64,000 nucleotides of DNA. Source: Selaginella moellendorffii (taxonomy: Eukaryota; Plantae; Lycopodiophyta). The DNA lies in NCBI RefSeq assembly GCF_000143415.4, contig NW_003314350.1, positions 62,001 through 126,000 of the forward strand, read 5' to 3'. The notes below the pieces were generated by a model. It was not told the DNA's origin, made no database searches, and saw only the letters and a program-made list of their open reading frames with translations. Below are positions 9,796 through 63,400 of the stretch, piece by piece. Within the stretch, counting starts at the first letter, position 1, and each line of letters begins with the position of its first letter. The position numbers and the translations under genes were made by a program.

Positions 9796-9930
9796 CTTTG
9801 CCGCAAAGCTTTCGTGCGTTTTAATTTAGTCGCGGCGCGTATATTCCCCATAAACCCTAGAATTTTTTTTGAAAGGCAGCGCCTTGGAGAAGATACTAGG
9901 GGAGGAGGGCTTTCTCTCTCTCCCGGGGCG

Positions 9931-12895
9931 ATGGCGAGCGCGATGGCGGTGGATTTCTCCGCCGCCGCCGACGAGGAGGATGCGATCAACGAGCCTATCC
10001 TGGTGGGATCACTCATGGCCGAGGTGAGAGGTTTAGCACATCATCGCGGGAAGCTGTCCGGCGACGGGCTCGCGCAGCTCGTCCGCGATCCGACGAATCG
10101 TTTCGATACGAATGCGTTCCGGGTGATCAACGAGCGCGGCGAGCAAGTCGGGTACATCCAGAAGGAAAAGGCCAAGAGTCTAGCGCCGCTGGTGGACAAG
10201 GGGCTGGCGCAGCTCCAGTGTATCGGTGCTGGGAGTGGGAGCTCTAACAGGGTCTCGTGTGAGGTCTTCGTGTTTAGCTTGCCGGCGATGGTCGACGCTG
10301 TCCGGGATCATCTCGAGTACTATGGCGAGCAGCTGAGAAGTCCTTACGATCCTCCAGTTGATAATGTAGATGATGGTCGTGGTGGTGGTGGTAGCGATCA
10401 ACGAGTAGCAAATGGTAGTTCTTCAAGAGGTGGTGGTGGTAGCGACCAACGAGTAGCAAACGGTGCTAGTTCTTCAAGAGCTTCGACTAGTTCTTCCAGC
10501 AGAGCTTCGACGAGGCGTGATTATCGTGATCACCACCAGCAGCACCAAAGGCCTCCTCGTGATCAGCATCACCGAGTCGATCGGTCGTTAAGTGTAGCGG
10601 CGCCACCACCGGCCAGGAGAAAGTTGATGATGACTCCTCCGCCTCCTCCGCCTCCTCCTCCTCAAGCTCCAAAGGCTCCAAGCATCGATGATATCTTCGA
10701 GAGCATGACGGCTGGAGCAAAGATCCGGCAGCGCATGGAAGCTGACAACAGTGTCATCAAGTCCTCGTTGATGCAACACCAGAAGGAGGCTCTGGCTTGG
10801 ATGGTCCAGCGAGAAAACTCGTCAGCTCTTCCTCCATTCTGGGAGAAGAAAGGCACGACAATGTATACCAACACTCTGACCAACGTTACGTCCGCCAAGC
10901 GCCCCGAGTCTCTCCGGGGTGGGATCTTAGCTGACGATATGGGACTCGGGAAGACACTCACGGTTCTAGCGCTCATTGCCACCAACAAGCCCGGTGCTGT
11001 TCTTCCACCGATCGAAGACATCAAGGAGCCAGAGCAAAGTCAGGGTGGCGAGCCAGCCTCGAAGAAGCTCAAAACTTCCGATGACAAAGGAAAGGCAAAG
11101 ACAGCAGCTCCGGTGCCCGTTTCCAACGACGGACCTCCCTGTGTTCCAGCAGCCGATGGTCCTCGAGGAACTCTGGTGATTTGCCCGCTCTCGGTGCTCA
11201 GCAACTGGGAGTCGCAGCTAAAGGATCACACGTACCCCGCGGGGCTCAAAGTCCACAAGTATCACGGACCGAATCGCACCGCCAACGCCAGGATTCTTGC
11301 AGACTATGACATCGTTTTCACGACTTACAACATGCTTACCGAGAGAAATTCTCCTCTCAAGAAGGTCCACTGGCTGAGGCTGGTGCTGGACGAGGCTCAC
11401 ATTATCAAGAACCCGAGAGCGCAGCAAACCAAGAGTGCGGTGGCCTTGAATGCCGACCGGAGATGGGCCGTGACGGGCACTCCAATCCAGAACAGTGCCA
11501 AGGATCTCCTCAGTCTCATGCAGTTTTTGCATTTCGAGCCTCTCAACGAGCAGAGTTTCTGGACGAAGACTATACAGAAGCCACTGACGAGCGGCGAGCC
11601 TGTTGGATTCGCTCGGCTCCAGGTAAAGTTCCTTCTTTCCTTTCGTTTATAACCGGCGGTTTCAACCAATCATTCAGGGACTTATGTCTTCCATCTCGCT
11701 GAGGAGAACGAAAGAGACGAAGGTGAACGGCAAGAAGCTCGTTGACTTGCCTCCCAAGATCATCACAGTCTTCCCGGTGGATCTCAGCCCTGAAGATCGC
11801 AGTCTGTACGACAAGATGGAAAAAGATGGCAGGAATATGATCCGGCGCTTCCTGGACAACGGCACGGTGACGAAGAACTACGCCGTGGTGCTACAGATGA
11901 TTCTCCGGTTGCGTCAGATATGCGATCACACGAGTATGTGCCCGGCGGAAATCGTTAATATGAGCACTTCATCAGACACCGACACTCAAGGTATGCCTAT
12001 GATCAGAAAAAATAAAAGGGAAACTTGACTTTTCTGAAACTTTGCAGGAGCAGGACCGAAAGCGGCCAGTCCAGAGCTGCTGAAAAAAATGCTGGCCACG
12101 TTGGGCGATGATTTCGACTGTCCGATCTGCCTCGCTCCTCCTTCGGGAGCCGTGATCACATCCTGCGCTCACGTTTTCTGCCGCCGGTGCCTCGAGAAAG
12201 CACTGGAAGACGAGGACAAGCAGTGTCCAATGTGCCACGAGGAGTTGAGCGAGGACGATATCTTCTCTTCCGGGAAACCAGACGAGGAGGAAGATGAAGA
12301 GCTGTCCAACAAAAACGATGTCGAGGACGACGATGACAAAATCGACGTGAAAGGAGTGAAGCCGAGCGCCAAGATCAACGCGCTGGTATCTATGCTGGAG
12401 AAGACGAGAGCCAAGGATCCAAATATCAAGTCGGTGGTGTTCTCCCAGTTCTCCACGATGCTCAAGCTCATCGAGGGGCCACTCCAAAAGGCCGGCTTCA
12501 AGTTCGTCAAGCTCGAGGGCGGCATGAGCGCCAGCAAGAGGGAAGAAAACATGGAAGCGTTCAAGTCGACACGCAGTGGCTCGCCGACGGTGTTCCTTCT
12601 CAGCCTCAAGGCCGCTGGAGTGGGATTGAATCTGGTGACGGCGTCCAACGTGTTCATGATGGACCCGTGGTGGAATCCGGCGGTGGAGGAACAGGCCATG
12701 GATCGAGTTCACAGGCTGGGACAGACGAGAGACGTTCATGTGTTTCGGCTCATTGCCACGGACAGCATCGAGGAGAGGCTGCTCCAAGTCCAGGAGAAGA
12801 AGAGGGCGTACGCCCAGATCGCGCTGGGAAAGGAGGCGTCCGAGCAGCGGAAGAAGAAGTGCGTGGAAGAAGTGAAGCTGCTCATGAAGTGCTAG
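9931..12895 (+). CDS. HLTF/RAD5-type SNF2 helicase with HIRAN and RING domains (SMARCA3-like)
   Basis: HIRAN LVRDPTNRFDTNAFRV; GGILADDMGLGKT; LDEAH; TGTPIQN; RING CPIC...CAHVFC...CPMC; helicase C-terminal DPWWNP...QAMDRVHRLGQ. Confidence 0.95.
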
Positions 12896-13479
12896 ATCGC
12901 TGGCGAAAGAATTAAAATTGTTTGATTATTTTGTAGGTAAGATTTAAACAAACCAGTTTACTTTAGTTGACCATTATTGACCTGACTTCCAGGTTGCTTT
13001 AGGGGTCATTAAGACGAAAAAAGGCATTAATTTAATCTCTGCGTTTTATTTCCAAAGTTGCTATTCATCCTCACTTTTTGGTTTCTCGAGTGTGTTAAAG
13101 CCATCAACACAGAAAATAACCGAGCTCATGAATTCTCATAACAGGAGGAATTCCTACTGCTCTTTGCCTATCCCTCCCCAGAATCGCAAACCCCATGAAT
13201 CTTCTTTATTCCTTATTCCTTCAGGTCACGCTCTTGGGACGAGAGCCAGAGTCCACGCACTCAGAATTCGAGCGGCTTCTTCTATCCTGCGTCTCCAGGA
13301 AAGTTGTTAATCAACAACGCTCCAGCATCCGACGATCATCGCTAAATATCTGCTTTAAATGCTCCATCTACGTTGTTTGATGCCGACCACGCGAGGGGCT
13401 CGAGGAAACAAAAGTGGAAATTCAACTTTTAGTCTCTCTTCTCTTACACGTTTCGATTACAGGAGTTCTCTATCAGCCA

Positions 13480-15980
13480 TGGAAAAGGATAGAAACAATG
13501 GAGATGAAGGTCCAGGCCCCAGGCAGGCAGCTTCTGTGAGGATGTAGTACATCCGAGATCACCATACAGCTGAGACACGTGGTGACACGTGGTGGATCTG
13601 GACTCTCACCTGTATATGTGTAACAGTATGTATATAACGGTGATGATATCTGAGCGATAAAGTTTTTCTCTTCTTCCTTAGTTTTCAACATGGTATTGGA
13701 GCTCAGGGATTAAATTCTGGGCTGAATGGAGGAGGAAGAGGAGGAAGACGATGAGTGAGCGGCTGTGAATTGCAAATATCAAGATGGAGGTTTTCTTGCT
13801 TATTTTGTCTTGTGCAGGCAACCCTAAAATGGAGGCGGTTCTTGATCGAGACTGGCCTGGATTTGAATTGAGAGCTTGCAACACCGCTTGCTACTGCTGG
13901 AGACGATCTGATGCCCCTGCTGCTACAAGGGAAGGCTTCCTTGGGCTGGAGATTTGCTGATGCTGCCAAGAGGCTTCTCTTCTTCCTGGGAATTGCTGTG
14001 TGCAATGATGGAGATATCACATTTGAGTGGGGGACATGGAACAAGATGCTGGTTCCTGACAAGTCCTGATACAAACTGGGCTGTGTGCAAGTTTGGGTAC
14101 CTTGGAACATGCTGCTACTGTTGTTCAACACCACAAGATGCTGATTTCATGAGCTCAGCTTTTCTTGGCTAAGTGGGGGTGTGAGATAAATTCATAGTGG
14201 TTTAGCATTAGTTTCTTTTTTCTGATCCAGCCTTTGCACGCTGATCTCGGCTGAGTGGGGGTGTGAGGATGTAGTACATCCGAGATCACCATACAGCTGA
14301 GACACGTGGTGACATGTGGTGGATCTGGAGAGTCATGATTCTCACTTGTGTATGTATAGCAGTGATGATATCTGAGCGAGAATCTCTGATACCATGTTGG
14401 AAACTAAGGAAGAAGAGAAAAACTCTATTGCTCAGATATCATCACCACTATACATATACAGGTGAGAGTCGTGACTCTCCAGATCCACCACGTGTCACCA
14501 CATGTCTCAGCCATATGGTGATCTTAGATGTACTACATCCTCATCCGAGATCAGCATGCAAAGGCTGGATCAGGAAAAAGAAACTAATGCTAAACCACTG
14601 TGAATCTATCTCACTCCCCCACTTAGCCAAGAAAAGCTAAGCTCATGAAATTAGCATTTTGTGGTGTTGAACAACAGTAGCAGCACGTTCCAAGGTACCC
14701 AAGCTTGCACACAGCCCAGCTTGTATCAGGACCCGTCAGAACCAGCATCTTGTTCCATGTCCCCCACTCAAATGTGATCTCTCCATCAGCCTCAAGGCCC
14801 TTGCGCACAGCAATTCCCAGGAAGAAGAGAAGCCTCTTGGGAGCATCAGCAAATCTCCAGCCCAAGGAAGCCTTCCCTTGTAGCAGCAGGGGCATTAGAT
14901 CATCTCCAGCGGTAGCAAGCGGTGTTGCAAGCTTTCAATTCATATCCAGGCCAGTCTCGATCAAGAACTGCCTCCATTTTAGGGTTGCCTGTACAAGACA
15001 AAATAAACAAGAAAACCTCCATCTTGATATTTGCAATTCACAGCTGCTCCAGATCAGGGGGCTCATCGTCTTCCTCCTCTTCCTCCTCCATTCAGATATA
15101 ATCCCTGAGCTCCAATACCATGTTGAAAACTAAGGAAGAAGAGAAAAACTCTCTCACTCAAATATCATCACCGTTATACATACATAGGTGGGAGCCACGT
15201 GTCTCAGCTGTACGGTGATCTCGGATGTACTACATCCTCACAGCTTCACTTTGGAGAGGTTCATGGCAATCTTTTCATGCATTGCAACAGGGATTTAGAC
15301 ACAGGTTTTCTGCTCACTGTGCAGGAATGAAGGTCACGTCAGTGCAGCTACAACGCTCGTTGGCATTGGTCAAGGAATCACTCATCCACTTGAAGGATTT
15401 CCAAAGCTTCGGTGCATTGGTGTGCTTTCCTGTTTGATTCCTCTTTTAACGAAGCTTTGCATATCGCTCTGGGAGCACTAGTTTTCCAGTGGCCAAGGTG
15501 TTAAAACTGCTCAAGTGGAGTAGATCCATGTCGTCGTTGATGATGTTCCTGTGGGAACTTCGGGTGCTGAACTCGAACATCCAGGTCATTGTATGCTTAT
15601 CATGTTCGCCTTTCTTCGTCCTTACTGCTTCTTGTCTCTTTTTCAGGCTGAATATGTGGCGTATCTAACTGGTAGAGTAGAAGAAGATCGAAATGCAAGC
15701 AGCCTGTATCACCACACCGGCTGGGTGCCCATACTTTCTGCAAATCTCACTTTAGAGGAAATGTTGTAAAGCACAGATGAATTCGAGAAGTCTGAAGGCA
15801 GGTCACCATATAGAGAAATTCTCCCTAGCCTTGAACACGAGTTGCTACTTCCAGGGCTTGGGCCAGTGCTTGACACTGCATCGCTCATGTCAACGCTGCT
15901 TGTCCTAGTCCAGATTCTTGAATAGAACGAGGGAGATTCAACTGTGCTTGGGGCGAATACTTTGAGCGCCCCATGTTAAA
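13480..15980 (+). pseudogene. Unknown spliced gene remnant interrupted by the TRIM dimer
   Basis: Removing 13535-15242 and one TSD copy rejoins an open frame (...PRQAAS|LWRGSWQSF...). Downstream exon-like pieces contain in-frame stops. Confidence 0.35.
13535..15242. mobile_element. Tail-to-tail (palindromic) dimer of a TRIM-type non-autonomous LTR retroelement
   Basis: Left unit: LTR TG...CA 13535-13690, PBS TGGTATTGGAGC, internal region, PPT GAGTGGGGG, truncated LTR 14262-~14380. Inverted unit: PBS 14385-14394, LTR 14395-14543, internal region, PBS ending at 15120, LTR 15121-15242. TSD GCTTC at 13530-13534 and 15243-15247. Confidence 0.9.
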
Positions 15981-54800: not shown

Positions 54801-56105
54801 GGTACGAAAAGGTAACCAAATCCATACCCAAGGAACGATTGTGAAGCCTTTGCACCCAAACGTGTACCCACTCGGATCATCGTTTTCATCTCTGCGTATG
54901 CAATGAGACTAGTTGCCCAATCTCATTGGATAGTATTGCTGAGACGTATTCTCTGATACCAAATGTAGCGCACGTGGTTTTTACCCTTTATCCTATGGTT
55001 ATTTACCATAGAATAACACCACGAAGCGGAACCTAAACCCTCTTTGTGCCACGTGACAGATGCCACATGTCACATGCCACGTGTCCATGCCACGTGTCCA
55101 TAGGAACCCGAGGTTCAGGGCCTTGGGTCACTGAACGAAGGAACGGTGCCAAACTCCCAAGCATGGGGCCAAGGAGTGACGGAACCGATCCACGGCGCAA
55201 CTCCTGAGCGTAAAGCCCAAGGAGCGAAGGGACAGGAGCCCGAAGTGACTTGGAACAGTCCTAGAGCGACCAGCATCCTAATGCCAGGACCAGCACGCAA
55301 AACGGGGCCAAACGGAGTCTAGCGCTATTTTGGCATACCTGTGGCCTAACGCGAGGACATGGGTACTCTACCAACTAGCATGGTGTGGAGCTTAGGCTTA
55401 GACCCAAGCTGGACGCAGAACAAGGACAGGCACACAAGCAGGAGCTAGACTATGCCTTAGGTCGGTCGGCCATGCCCGACCTACCCACTATCCCTACTAT
55501 ACATTTGGAACCCCCCACAGCCCCCCCCTTGAGGAACACACGCTTTGGGCTTTCACCCCAAGCCTCCCTTAATATCAGGAGTTAGTCTCTGGGACAAACT
55601 CGAAACTTACTAAATATGGAATGACGCTAGATTGCGAATTTGGACACGGGACGAACACCATTGTGTTCAGGCCGATCTCTACATTCCGTAGATATGCCAA
55701 ATGAGCCAATCTGAACACTTTCCATAAATAGCATTTGGGACCGAAATGAGACTAACACAAAGGGTATGATAGCGAGGGTGTTTGGCAGACACGGTAAGCT
55801 ATCATCTAGCGATATTGAGGGACCAATCTCAACATCGCGGGGGTTCTTGATACTAGCAAGTGCAAGCCAATGACACAAGTTTCTCAAACTAGGCCGAGTA
55901 TGCTCAGCAAGAAACACATAGGGTTCCTACCTTATGTTTATCCAATCTAAGTGCATGTTCATTGACCAGTTTCTCAACTAGCTCAAGTGAGAACTGATAA
56001 CGGGCCCAACAATACCGACCTCCTGCCGTCGTGGCAGTAAGGTAAGAATGTCCGAAAGGACTGGTTGACAGGTAACTTTCGATACCCGAAGCCACATTCG
56101 CGACA
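48865..56105 (-). mobile_element. Structurally intact non-autonomous LTR retrotransposon (LARD-like, Gypsy-derived)
   Basis: LTRs 48865-50010 and 54964-56105 (TG...CA); TSD CTAAT on both sides; PBS TGGTATCAGAG at 54961-54951; PPT at 50011-50022; no long internal ORF. Confidence 0.95.
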
Positions 56106-60446: not shown

Positions 60447-63400
60447 TGTAGGAAGCGAACCCCATACTATAAGGAACTAACTCCTTGAGGTGTCAAAAGC
60501 TAAAGGATCCTTGAAAGCATAACTAAAATGATAAAGAGTTTATTGGATGAGATCAAATTCGAGATCAAGTCCAAGATTGACTCTGAGACCGAGTTCAAAA
60601 CTATGTCTGAGATCGAGCCCGAGACCGACTCTGAGATCGAGTTCAAGACTGAGTTCGAAACCGAGATCAAGTCCGAGACCGAGTCCGAATACTAATACAA
60701 GTTGGGTGGTGAAAGCCCAAAGCGTGTGTCTCCCAAGGGAGAGGGGGGGGGGAGGGGGTGTTGTAGGGGGTTTCAAAAGTATAATAGGGATAGTGAGGTC
60801 CAGGAACCAGTTTTGAAGGAACTCTCCAGTGGTGTTGAGACTAGGGTTGAGGGGCCTTGGGTGGGAGTGAGTATGGATTCGGGTGGTGCTGGAGGGGCCA
60901 CCCAAGGAAGTGCTCAAGAGTAGCTCCCACTCCCGGAAGGGAAACTGTCTACTGCGCTCCCGGCTCATGTGGAATGGTGCCCCACTTGAGTACCTTGCAG
61001 CTCATTGGTCCTTGCTCTTCCTAGGGGCTTGGGCCTTCCTTTTGGGATAGAAGTGGAGGAGTAGGGGTACCCATATCGGGCCGTTAGGCCATGGTGTTTT
61101 CCTCTGATGTCCCGAAGCAAGTGTTGCACCCAAAACTTGGAATTTAGAGGGTCCCATGATCAAATTTTGTTATACCAAGGGATGTTAGGAATCTAGAGGC
61201 TTGGTGTGCTTGGCTACTTGTGTTTGCAAAGAATGTAATTGAACCTTAAATCCAGTCTAACTCGAAGAGGGGGATTGAAAGAGAATTTAGGAATCCGTGG
61301 ATGGATGGTTAATACTCCATCTCGTGTAGTGAGTTGTTGAAACCAAGTAGGGCCAAGTAAGAGTTGGTACAATAGGCGGGAACCTTCACAAGGGAACTTA
61401 ACTAAGGCCAAGGCTGTGGTGGTCGGATAGACAAGGTAAACTAGCAAATTGGAAAGGAAAAATTTATGGGGTATAATTTGGTATTGGAGCCTTTTTCTCA
61501 GTTCTAGTGAAGGATAGAGGTGGATTGCTGGGAGATGGCAAAAGCAGGGCATAAAAGAACTAAGGCAGAGACAAAACCTCTTTTAGAGCTAGAGCCTCCA
61601 GTCGAACAAAAAGCTATGGATGAGGAATTCTTGCATGAGGAGGACTTTAGTGAGGAAACTTCTAAACAGGAGTCCGGTGGTGAGTTTCAGTTGTCCAAGG
61701 CTTGATTAAATGTTCTAGAAGGACAATTGGCATAGACCAATGCCCTGTTGGAGACTCTCGTATGCAAGCTAAAGCATGACAAGAAAGGGAAGAAAAAACA
61801 AAAGACTGCAGATGTTGGCAGTGCAGAAGGCGTGGACCCTTCGGCAGGGACTAAAGTGGAACCGAACAAGGTTGAACAAACCAAAGTGGAATCAATCCCT
61901 CAAGCAGTTCCCAAATACAAACCAAAACCCCCACTAATATTCAAGGGAGTGAATGATTATAAGGTGGTGAAAGATTGGTTTTACGATATGGAAAATTACT
62001 TTCGAGCATTGTGGTTACCAAGCTTGAAGAAGGTCCCATGTGCAAAACTATACTTGGCAAATAATGCCAAGTTTTGGTGGAGAAAAATAGAGACCAATAA
62101 AGGACCAGTGGCCACTTGGGAAATGATGAAGGTGAGGATCTGTGTGACTTACGTTCCTCCGAATGCTACTTTGCACCTAAGGGATGAGCTGAGTAAGTTG
62201 AAGGAGACCAAAACTATTCAAGAGTATGTGAATGCGTTTATGACAAAGAGGACACTTGTTACGGATATGGGTGATATGATGTGTTTCATGCCTTCATATC
62301 AGGCTTGCAAATTTGGGCTCGAGGCAAGGTGATGCATTGGAACTTGACCAATTATAAGGAAGTATTGAATGCAACTATTAATGTGTATTTCGATGATAAC
62401 CTGTGAAAGGGAACACAATGGGGTTGGGATCCATGTTCAGCAAAGGAGCCAAACCAAGAGGGACATATGGCAAAGGGAAATTCAAGAAGAGTTTCTCTAA
62501 GAATGAGTCCTTAAGGTTTCAAAAAGGCACATTCGGTGGCTAGTAAGCAAGTACATGGGGGAGTCAAGCGAAAAAGGACAAACCCATGGATAAAAAGGTT
62601 AAGTCAGTTAGTAGCATGGGAAACAATATATATTTCAACTGCGGTGAAGCAAGACACTTTTCAAGAGAATGTCCTTACCCCAAAGAAGGCCAAAGTCAAT
62701 ATCGCCATTAAGTCGGGTGAAAACCAAACTGAGGTGTGTGATCCAGTCCTTAGCTCAAAGTTACTTATTACATAAAGAGTCATTCGCGACATTTACTAAC
62801 CCTCCAAGGGAAGCTCGGAAATAACTTTGTTAAGATCCTAGTGCTTTAGATAATTTTGTGATTGCAGACATAGTCCGGCAAGCCGGACTAATAGTGCAGA
62901 AGCTGGATGAACCAAGGACTATAGAGTTTGTTCAAGATAGCTAAAGCATCAATGAGGTACTTCGATAAACAAGAGTCGAAGTAGAGACATGGAAAGTAAA
63001 CATGGACTTTATCGTGTTGGACATGATGGGATTTGATGTGATCTTCGGGATGGATTGGTTCAATCGATTTGTGGTAGCCCTATATGGACAAGGTAGGAAC
63101 CTTATGGTACTGGCAAATGCCTGGAGGCCCAAGATCTAAAGGTAGGGCAATGTAAGGGTAAAGACTCCTTCTTGAACCTGGTGTCCACAAGAGGACAACT
63201 CACTAAAGGAACCAAGACAGCATTTTTGTGTTTACTCTCGGTGAGGAGTGACAAAAAGACGGGAATAAAAGAAGTACCTTTAGTGATCTAGTAGGTGTTG
63301 GATTAATTTCAAAATACTATGTCAAAGGAGCTACCAGCGAGATTACCCCCCACATGACCAATAGAATATAAAATTGAGTTGGTCGAGGGTGCTAAGGCGG

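What the first reader, a model, noticed from the sequence alone, without database searches (positions are those of the whole stretch)
13530..15247. Palindromic TRIM dimer apparently inserted as one unit through two U3 ends (single TSD)
Seen: two copies of a miniature LTR element (LTR about 120-155 bp, Met-type PBS, ~570-bp internal region) are joined tail-to-tail into a ~1.7-kb near-perfect inverted repeat with almost no spacer. Both outer ends are the LTR 5' end (TGTGAGGATG... and ...CATCCTCACA), and the same GCTTC flanks both sides. The inner LTR of copy 2 is followed by another PBS and has lost its PPT, which suggests a tandem-array precursor. Known: normal LTR integration uses one U3 end and one U5 end and gives direct repeats. 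Inference: a fold-back or inverted cDNA dimer was integrated, so an LTR retroelement now looks like a TIR element, and any read-through transcript would form an ~850-bp hairpin siRNA source.
Basis: partly seen in the sequence, partly recalled or inferred. Interest (0 to 1): 0.8.

Follow-up and report, generated by a model that had tools for sequence, protein, structure and literature searches.

The report
Inverted TRIM retrotransposon pair, one insertion
Two copies of a tiny non-coding plant retrotransposon sit tail-to-tail in Selaginella moellendorffii and were most likely pasted into the chromosome in one step through two identical element ends; this rare arrangement has already been catalogued in maize.

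Summary
At 13535-15242, two ~0.85-kb TRIM-type LTR mini-elements (LTR ~150 bp, Met-tRNA PBS, PPT, no coding capacity) lie tail-to-tail. Both outer ends are the LTR 5' (U3) end, and GCTTC flanks both sides.

The genome is Selaginella moellendorffii. The second haplotype scaffold carries the same dimer, the same central junction and the same flanks (GCTTC / ACTTC). So this is not an assembly artefact, and it predates the haplotype split.

When the haplotypes split, the two arms and all four LTRs were almost identical: 9 fixed differences in 748 columns. This fits one event.

The best reading (about 0.7) is a single integrase reaction that used two U3 ends. The two U5 ends were joined to each other, one cut back about 30 nt and the other keeping an 11-12 nt PBS tail.

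- The "lost PPT" is a later 12-bp deletion found only in this haplotype.
- The centre is not spacer-free; it has about 50 nt of asymmetric sequence.

The idea is not new. Gao et al. 2016 (PMC4717578) reported inverted TRIM pairs with one TSD in maize (class R-L4I2, PCR-validated). This scan also flagged two other same-end LTR insertions in this genome. The hairpin-siRNA idea was not tested. One short-read contig hints at an empty allele but could not be resolved.

The parts
13530..13534 (.). left copy of the 5-bp target-site duplication, GCTTC
   Evidence: GCTTC in both haplotypes
13535..13690 (+). copy 1, 5' LTR (156 nt, TG...CA); outer end of the dimer is the U3 end
   Evidence: In one search, contigs of other family copies diverge at about 13531 (X1/X2) and at 13690 (X6), i.e. 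at or within 4 nt of these two LTR ends.
13691..13702 (+). copy 1 PBS, TGGTATTGGAGC (10 of 12 to the Met-tRNA type TGGTATCAGAGC)
13703..14252 (+). copy 1 internal region, non-coding; holds a second PPT/LTR-start-like stretch at 14158-14185
   Evidence: (D7)
14253..14261 (+). copy 1 polypurine tract, GAGTGGGGG
14262..14382 (+). copy 1, 3' LTR, truncated at about nt 121 (last ~30 nt of U5 missing)
   Evidence: In one search an X6 contig of another family copy runs past 14381 into normal LTR sequence.
14383..14394 (-). PBS tail (TGGTATCAGAGA) following copy 2's 3' LTR; the central junction lies at 14382/14383
   Evidence: the same junction is present in the other haplotype
14395..14543 (-). copy 2, 3' LTR (149 nt). 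Its first two bases and the PPT are lost in this haplotype only.
14544..15108 (-). copy 2 internal region
15109..15120 (-). copy 2 PBS, TGGTATTGGAGC
15121..15242 (-). copy 2, 5' LTR (122 nt here; an internal deletion of about 30 nt is specific to this haplotype); outer end is the U3 end
15243..15247 (.). right copy of the target-site duplication, GCTTC (ACTTC in the other haplotype)

Best explanation
A single integrase-mediated insertion used two U3 ends.

Two cDNA copies of one TRIM source element were joined U5-to-U5. One U5 end had lost about 30 nt. The other still carried an 11-12 nt copy of the tRNA primer site. The joining could have happened in three ways:
- by end-joining before integration;
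- by reverse-transcriptase strand switching;
- by host repair after an integrase complex had inserted the U3 ends of two separate cDNA molecules.

Both free ends then read 5'-TG...CA-3'. The integrase of an unknown autonomous partner inserted them in concert 640 bp downstream of an SNF2/RING helicase gene and duplicated GCTTC.

Shown: the anatomy, the TSD, presence in both haplotypes, and near-identity of the arms at the haplotype split.

Inferred: the integrase step, how the two U5 ends were joined, and any later role as a hairpin RNA source.

Since insertion the element has decayed by transition-rich mutation and small deletions, with at least one arm-to-arm gene conversion.
For: (1) Both outer ends are exact LTR 5' termini (TGTGAGGATG...), and the same 5 bp flank them. 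The match is 5/5 here and 4/5 in the other haplotype, which differs by one G>A. A 5/5 match at fixed boundaries has a chance of about 1 in 1024.

(2) The flanks do not continue the inverted repeat beyond one base. This excludes a DNA-level inverted duplication of an older insertion.

(3) The other haplotype scaffold (L001, GL377605.1) has the same dimer, the same central join and the same flanks, although it differs at 8.7% of element positions.

(4) In the four-arm comparison there are 631 invariant columns, only 9 differences fixed between copy 1 and copy 2, and 92 singletons. Only 2 differences are fixed among the four LTR positions. The arms are therefore the same age and came from the same or nearly the same template.

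(5) The centre has no target-site sequence. It has the marks of processed cDNA ends: a U5 deletion on one side and a PBS tail of at most 12 nt on the other. A random breakpoint in a ~727-nt tandem unit would fall within 18 nt of the LTR only about 2.5% of the time.

(6) Other family copies end at or within 4 nt of the normal U3 and U5 LTR ends (loose ends at 13531 and 13690), so the family is an ordinary LTR element.

(7) Ty1 integrase inserts any fragment ending TG...CA and makes a 5-bp TSD (PMC2939329).

(8) Inverted TRIM pairs with one TSD exist in maize (PMC4717578).
Against: - No empty site was recovered, so the single-TSD inference rests on 5 bp.
- No genome-wide survey of the family was possible, so I do not know how often monomers, tandem arrays or other inverted pairs occur.
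- The PBS after copy 2's inner LTR could still come from a tandem (L3I2) precursor. Tandem arrays are reported for 5 of the 8 Selaginella TRIM subfamilies.
- One LTR position (GAGCGA[T/G]A) shows the pattern outer1 = inner2 and inner1 = outer2, which no simple model predicts.
- Use of two U3 ends by an integrase in vivo is assumed from general knowledge of these enzymes. It was not shown for this family.
Confidence: 0.7

Rival explanations
1. Two successive ordinary insertions. Copy 1 inserted first and made GCTTC. A second element, itself a tandem form, then inserted in the opposite orientation exactly into the right-hand GCTTC. A later deletion removed the end of copy 1, the middle GCTTC and most of the second unit.
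For: Tandem TRIMs are common (PMC4717578). An LTR followed by a PBS is what a tandem form would leave. Small deletions are frequent in this locus.
Against: This needs re-use of the identical 5-bp site, a tandem donor, and a deletion ending only 11-12 nt past an LTR. There is no trace of a central GCTTC. The arms are the same age and almost identical at the haplotype split.
Confidence: 0.07
2. A host DNA rearrangement made the palindrome from older TRIM DNA, for example a fold-back inverted duplication, or an inversion plus a deletion. The GCTTC match would then be chance.
For: Palindromes do arise by fold-back repair. The arms show arm-to-arm gene conversion, so DNA-level exchange acts on this locus.
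Against: A fold-back copy of an inserted element would carry the inverted flank (GAAGC...) on the far side. Instead the right side has a direct GCTTC followed by unrelated sequence. Both outer ends stop exactly at TG/CA. A chance 5/5 match is about 0.1%.
Confidence: 0.1
3. The 1.7-kb palindrome is itself a mobile unit. It would be a foldback or TIR-like element built from TRIM parts, moving in this form, with other copies that share the same centre.
For: TIR-like ends with a TSD. This scan flagged two other same-end LTR structures in this genome (s1-432137, s1-405264; unchecked).
Against: There is no second copy in the window or in the loci held. Read contigs of the family end at or close to the normal U3 and U5 LTR ends. 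No transposase gene is present and the ORFs have no relatives. A 5-bp TSD with TG/CA ends points to a retroelement integrase.
Confidence: 0.05
4. Assembly artefact: a collapsed or mis-joined repeat.
For: Palindromes are hard to assemble. No single long read across the locus was available.
Against: Both haplotype scaffolds give the same architecture from sequences that differ at 8.7% of positions. A third genotype (runs X1/X2) has contigs across the left flank/LTR junction at single-copy depth.
Confidence: 0.02

Closest known systems
Inverted TA-TRIM, class 'R-L4I2' (Gao et al. 2016, Genome Biol 17:7, PMC4717578; Fig. 2C, Zma-SMART at AC220956:117725-118283, TSD CTTCA; Suppl. Table S3: 6 of 93 maize arrays)
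   Same: Four LTRs, two internal regions, the two TRIMs in opposite orientation, and one 5-bp TSD around the whole. The structure was confirmed independently of the assembly: by PCR in maize, by a second haplotype here.
   Different: A different family and lineage (a lycophyte). The paper gives no junction anatomy, no statement of which ends face outward, and no mechanism. Here the outer ends are U3, and the centre is a truncated U5 joined to a PBS tail. I could not read the maize sequence to compare.
Tandemly arrayed TRIMs (L3I2 etc.) and Ty1 multimeric cDNA arrays
   Same: More than one element unit inserted with a single TSD. An LTR followed directly by a PBS.
   Different: Those arrays are head-to-tail, share LTRs, and keep one U3 and one U5 end. 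Here the units are inverted and both ends are U3.
Mu killer (maize; an inverted duplication of MuDR that gives a hairpin RNA and silences the family; Slotkin et al. 2005, cited in PMC11624286)
   Same: An inverted duplication of a transposon that would fold into a long hairpin if transcribed through. The predicted fold has 765 of 782 pairs between the arms.
   Different: No evidence here of read-through transcription or of small RNAs. The origin here is an integration event rather than a rearrangement with flanking DNA.
Aberrant retroviral cDNA end-joining products (LTR-LTR junctions with deletions or PBS insertions in 2-LTR circles; from my own knowledge, no paper retrieved)
   Same: A U5 end cut back, and a U5 end that keeps PBS nucleotides, ligated without microhomology.
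   Different: Circles join U5 to U3 of one molecule and are dead ends. Here U5 is joined to U5, which leaves two usable U3 ends.

Membership tests
[quoted passage not shown] | short direct LTRs (about 100-250 bp) starting TG and ending CA | tested here: met
   LTRs of 156/149 nt, and 121/122 nt where truncated or deleted
[quoted passage not shown] | PBS complementary to a tRNA 3' end directly after the 5' LTR, and a PPT directly before the 3' LTR | tested here: met
   TGGTATTGGAGC / TGGTATCAGAGA immediately after ...CA; GAGTGGGGG immediately before TG. The match to tRNA-iMet is judged against the consensus PBS motif from my own knowledge, not against a Selaginella tRNA gene.
[quoted passage not shown] | small size and no gag/pol coding capacity | tested here: met
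   About 880 bp per unit. The ORFs have no Pfam hit and no homologues. No Rfam family is present, so it is not Cassandra or Helenus type.
[quoted passage not shown] | 5-bp TSD around each element | tested here: not met
   Neither unit has its own TSD. Only the pair as a whole does.
Inverted TA-TRIM (R-L4I2, Gao et al. 2016) | two TRIM units in opposite orientation, four LTRs, two internal regions | tested here: met
Inverted TA-TRIM (R-L4I2, Gao et al. 2016) | one TSD flanking the whole pair | tested here: met
   GCTTC/GCTTC here and GCTTC/ACTTC in the other haplotype
Foldback / TIR DNA transposon | family copies share the inverted-terminal form and are moved by a transposase | tested here: inconclusive
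   No other copy in the DNA held. Read contigs show family copies ending at or near the normal U3 and U5 LTR ends. A whole-genome search was not possible with these tools.
Hairpin silencing locus (Mu killer type) | read-through transcript and derived small RNAs | not testable with these tools
   Only contigs of a run guessed to be RNA (X6) match parts of the element, e.g. 13821-13944 with no difference. Strand and extent are unknown.

The most novel reading that the evidence does not exclude
Same-end integration of joined cDNAs may be a recurrent pathway in Selaginella moellendorffii. This locus is U3-U3, and the scan flagged two other loci: a U5-U5 case and a 19-kb inverted-LTR block. The resulting palindromes might act as hairpin sources that silence their own family. 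They might also be lost again by precise excision between the 5-bp repeats, as the unresolved X2 contig joining 13451-13479 to 15261 onward may hint.
Probability: 0.15. Interest if true: 0.65.

Novelty: new member of a known kind. Interest (0 to 1): 0.4.

Why it matters
The locus records an integrase event that paired two identical LTR ends. It also preserves the join between the two discarded U5 ends, one cut back and one with a PBS tail. That join is a direct clue to how inverted TRIM pairs form, which the maize catalogue left unexplained. Because both haplotypes carry it, the later fate of a 1.7-kb palindrome can be read: fast transition-biased decay, haplotype-specific deletions and arm-to-arm conversion. 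It does not add a new class of element, and any silencing role is untested.

Tried and rejected
- Search for other family copies: window BLAST, the scan's own index by sequence, a metagenome pattern scan, and a protein search with the 142-aa ORF to reach annotated copies. All were blank.
- Rfam gave only sub-threshold miRNA-like hits caused by the hairpin. Pfam gave nothing.
- Reads. All four runs were Logan contigs, so no start, strand or long-read span was available.
  - Several 'opposite strands' joints (13582/14478, 13698/14395, 13729/15078) are best read as contigs of a third genotype. Their undeleted LTR or PBS stretches align better to another of the four homologous LTRs. I do not count them as support for, or against, the central join.
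  - The joint 14288/14335 sits on a 16-nt palindrome inside the LTR and stays unexplained.
  - The X6 joint 13131->15371 rests on 27 nt and belongs to some other repeat.
- Microhomology at the central join: at most 3 nt with 1 nt of filler. The site has mutated differently in the two haplotypes, so I draw no conclusion from it.
- The PBS-like hits at 54950 (-) and 61479 (+) are unrelated to this family by sequence.
- Literature searches for 'inverted dimer' LTR insertions and for PBS insertions at LTR junctions found nothing usable.

Full report
**What is there.**

The stretch 13535-15242 consists of two units of one miniature LTR element in opposite orientation.

Copy 1 lies on the + strand:
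- 5' LTR 13535-13690 (156 nt, TG...CA)
- PBS TGGTATTGGAGC at 13691-13702
- a ~550-nt non-coding internal region
- a polypurine tract GAGTGGGGG at 14253-14261
- a 3' LTR at 14262-14382 that stops at about LTR nt 121

Copy 2 lies on the - strand:
- 5' LTR 15242->15121
- PBS 15120->15109
- internal region
- 3' LTR 14543->14395
- a further PBS, TGGTATCAGAGA (14394->14383), which directly abuts the truncated LTR of copy 1

Both outer ends are therefore the LTR 5' (U3) terminus. GCTTC lies on both sides (13530-13534 and 15243-15247). The flanks do not continue the inverted repeat beyond one base.

The 29-nt LTR start occurs three times in the window, where shuffles predict none. There is no further copy in the 64 kb.

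The ORFs have no Pfam hit and no relatives. No Rfam family is present. Each unit is therefore a TRIM, and not a Cassandra or Helenus type.

- The arms are 92.7% identical over 794 aligned columns, with 118 gap columns, so they are not near-perfect.
- About 50 nt at the centre has no partner (I3), so the palindrome is asymmetric.

**Where it is.**

The upstream gene is an SNF2/RING (HLTF-like) helicase. Its product is 100% identical to Selaginella moellendorffii XP_024518098. The window is scaffold GL377654.1; L002 is identical over 3601 bases. The pair lies 640 bp past that gene's stop codon and about 950 bp before a phosphodiesterase gene, so it is intergenic.

**The second haplotype.**

The assembly holds both haplotypes. 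The other one (L001, GL377605.1) carries the same pair, the same central join and the same flanks. Its left flank repeat is GCTTC and its right one is ACTTC, a single transition.

The two haplotypes differ at 8.66% of element positions, and 78% of those differences are transitions. The flanks differ by only 3.45% and 1.68%. They were therefore assembled from different reads, and an assembly artefact is very unlikely. The element mutates faster than its surroundings, as methylated repeats do; the methylation link is my inference.

L001 also shows that copy 2's PPT and the first TG of its inner LTR were originally present. Their absence in the window is a later 12-bp deletion. The deletion of about 30 nt in copy 2's outer LTR is also specific to this haplotype.

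**Age and relation of the arms.**

I aligned the four arms: two copies in each of two haplotypes.
- 631 columns are invariant.
- 9 differences are fixed between copy 1 and copy 2.
- 92 differences are singletons; 56 of these are C>T or G>A.

Among the four LTR positions only 2 differences are fixed. So when the haplotypes split, the arms and all four LTRs were almost identical. The two units are the same age and came from the same or nearly the same template. This fits one event and fits poorly with two unrelated insertions.

A cluster of differences at 13873-13885 is shared by both arms of this haplotype. It is absent from the other haplotype, and family contigs carry a different sequence at this spot. 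I read it as arm-to-arm gene conversion.

**The family.**

Contigs of a third genotype (runs X1/X2) cover the flanks at single-copy depth and the element at roughly 10-40 times that depth. The family therefore has tens of close copies.

Contigs of other copies diverge from the window at about 13531, a few bases before the LTR start, and at 13690, the LTR end. One contig runs past 14381 into normal LTR sequence. So the LTR boundaries and the truncation point are real, and the family behaves as an ordinary LTR element.

A contig crosses the left flank/LTR junction in X1/X2.

One X2 contig, at single-allele depth, joins 13451-13479 to 15261 onward. It breaks exactly where the other haplotype has a 5-bp deletion and a SNP. 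I leave it unresolved.

**Mechanism.**

The right-hand junction (U3 end next to a direct GCTTC) cannot be derived from the junctions of a single older insertion. A fold-back copy would carry GAAGC and the inverted flank. Two exact TG/CA ends with a 5-bp duplication are the signature of a retroelement integrase.

The most economical account is one concerted integration that used two U3 ends, while the two U5 ends were joined to each other. The centre shows one U5 trimmed by about 30 nt and the other carrying 11-12 nt of PBS, with no target sequence, no clear microhomology and at most 1 nt of filler.

A PBS tail of at most 18 nt is what a plus strand gains by copying the tRNA primer (established reverse-transcription scheme, from my own knowledge). 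A random breakpoint in a ~727-nt tandem unit would fall that close to the LTR only about 2.5% of the time. A tandem (L3I2) precursor is still not excluded, because 5 of the 8 Selaginella TRIM subfamilies form arrays.

I cannot tell which of three routes joined the U5 ends:
- end-joining before integration;
- reverse-transcriptase strand switching;
- host repair after an integrase complex had paired the U3 ends of two separate cDNAs.

That an integrase needs little more than TG...CA ends is shown for Ty1 (Friedl et al. 2010, PMC2939329).

**Comparison with what is known.**

Gao et al. 2016 (PMC4717578) first reported TRIMs in S. moellendorffii: 8 subfamilies, 1,177 complete copies, 1.19% of the genome. 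[quoted passage not shown] That locus was validated by PCR and sequencing. Their class 'R-L4I2' holds 6 of 93 arrays. They gave no junction anatomy and no mechanism.

The present locus is thus a new member of a recorded kind, and to my knowledge the first described in a lycophyte. It adds detail on the ends and the centre.

This scan also flagged two other same-end LTR structures in this genome: s1-405264 (U5-U5) and s1-432137 (a 19-kb block with inverted LTR ends and one TSD). I did not check them. They are leads for recurrence, not support.

**The hairpin idea.**

A read-through RNA would fold almost entirely arm on arm. In the predicted fold, 765 of 782 pairs join the two arms, and 11 perfect runs are 21 nt or longer. 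The parallel is Mu killer (cited in PMC11624286).

The only expression data are contigs of run X6, which is merely guessed to be RNA. They match 13821-13944 and 13915-13968 without a difference. X6 has depth over the end of the helicase gene (12600-12932) and none at 13205-13567 beside the element. This suggests that the element, or an identical copy elsewhere, is transcribed. It says nothing about strand, read-through or small RNAs.

**Verdict.**

- Observation: confirmed.
- Interpretation: partly supported.
- Best explanation: one integrase event with two U3 ends (0.7).
- Novelty: modest, because of the maize precedent.
- Interest: 0.4.

Noticed in passing
window 13873-13885 and the mirror stretch 14920-14937: A cluster of four substitutions plus an indel is shared by both arms of this haplotype. 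It is absent from both arms of the other haplotype, and family contigs carry a different sequence at this spot. This looks like arm-to-arm gene conversion inside the palindrome.
   Followed up: partly
window 13535-15242 against L001 13614-15344: The haplotypes differ at 8.66% of element positions (78% transitions), against 1.7-3.5% in the flanks. The repeat decays about three times faster than its surroundings.
   Followed up: partly
window 13451-13479 joined to 15261 onward (run X2): One contig at single-allele depth skips the whole pair. It may be an empty allele or a precise loss of the palindrome. The letters between the two pieces are unknown.
   Followed up: partly
window 14158-14185 (and its mirror in copy 2): The internal region holds a second PPT-plus-LTR-start-like stretch (GCTAAGTGGGGGTGTGAG), about 80 nt upstream of the real PPT/LTR border. 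It may be a relic of an older LTR boundary in the family.
   Followed up: no
window 14327-14342 and the homologous LTR positions: The LTR carries a palindrome of about 16 nt (GAGAGTCA / TGAYTCTC; perfect only in copy 2's inner LTR) and two CACGTG (G-box-like) motifs in its first 60 nt. A read joint (14288/14335) sits at the palindrome centre and remains unexplained.
   Followed up: no
window 54950-54961 (- strand) and 61479-61490 (+ strand): Further Met-tRNA-type PBS-like motifs are present, probably from other LTR elements. They have no sequence similarity to this TRIM.
   Followed up: partly
window 15262-15500: The right flank has about 3-4 times single-copy depth in run X1, and contigs of X6 match it. 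It may itself be part of another low-copy repeat.
   Followed up: no
window 9814-12895 against L001 10001-12976: The SNF2/RING helicase products of the two haplotypes differ in length in the database records (948/950 aa against 928 aa; an older model has 851 aa). The N-terminal part holds a short tandem protein repeat (GGGGSDQRVANG...).
   Followed up: no
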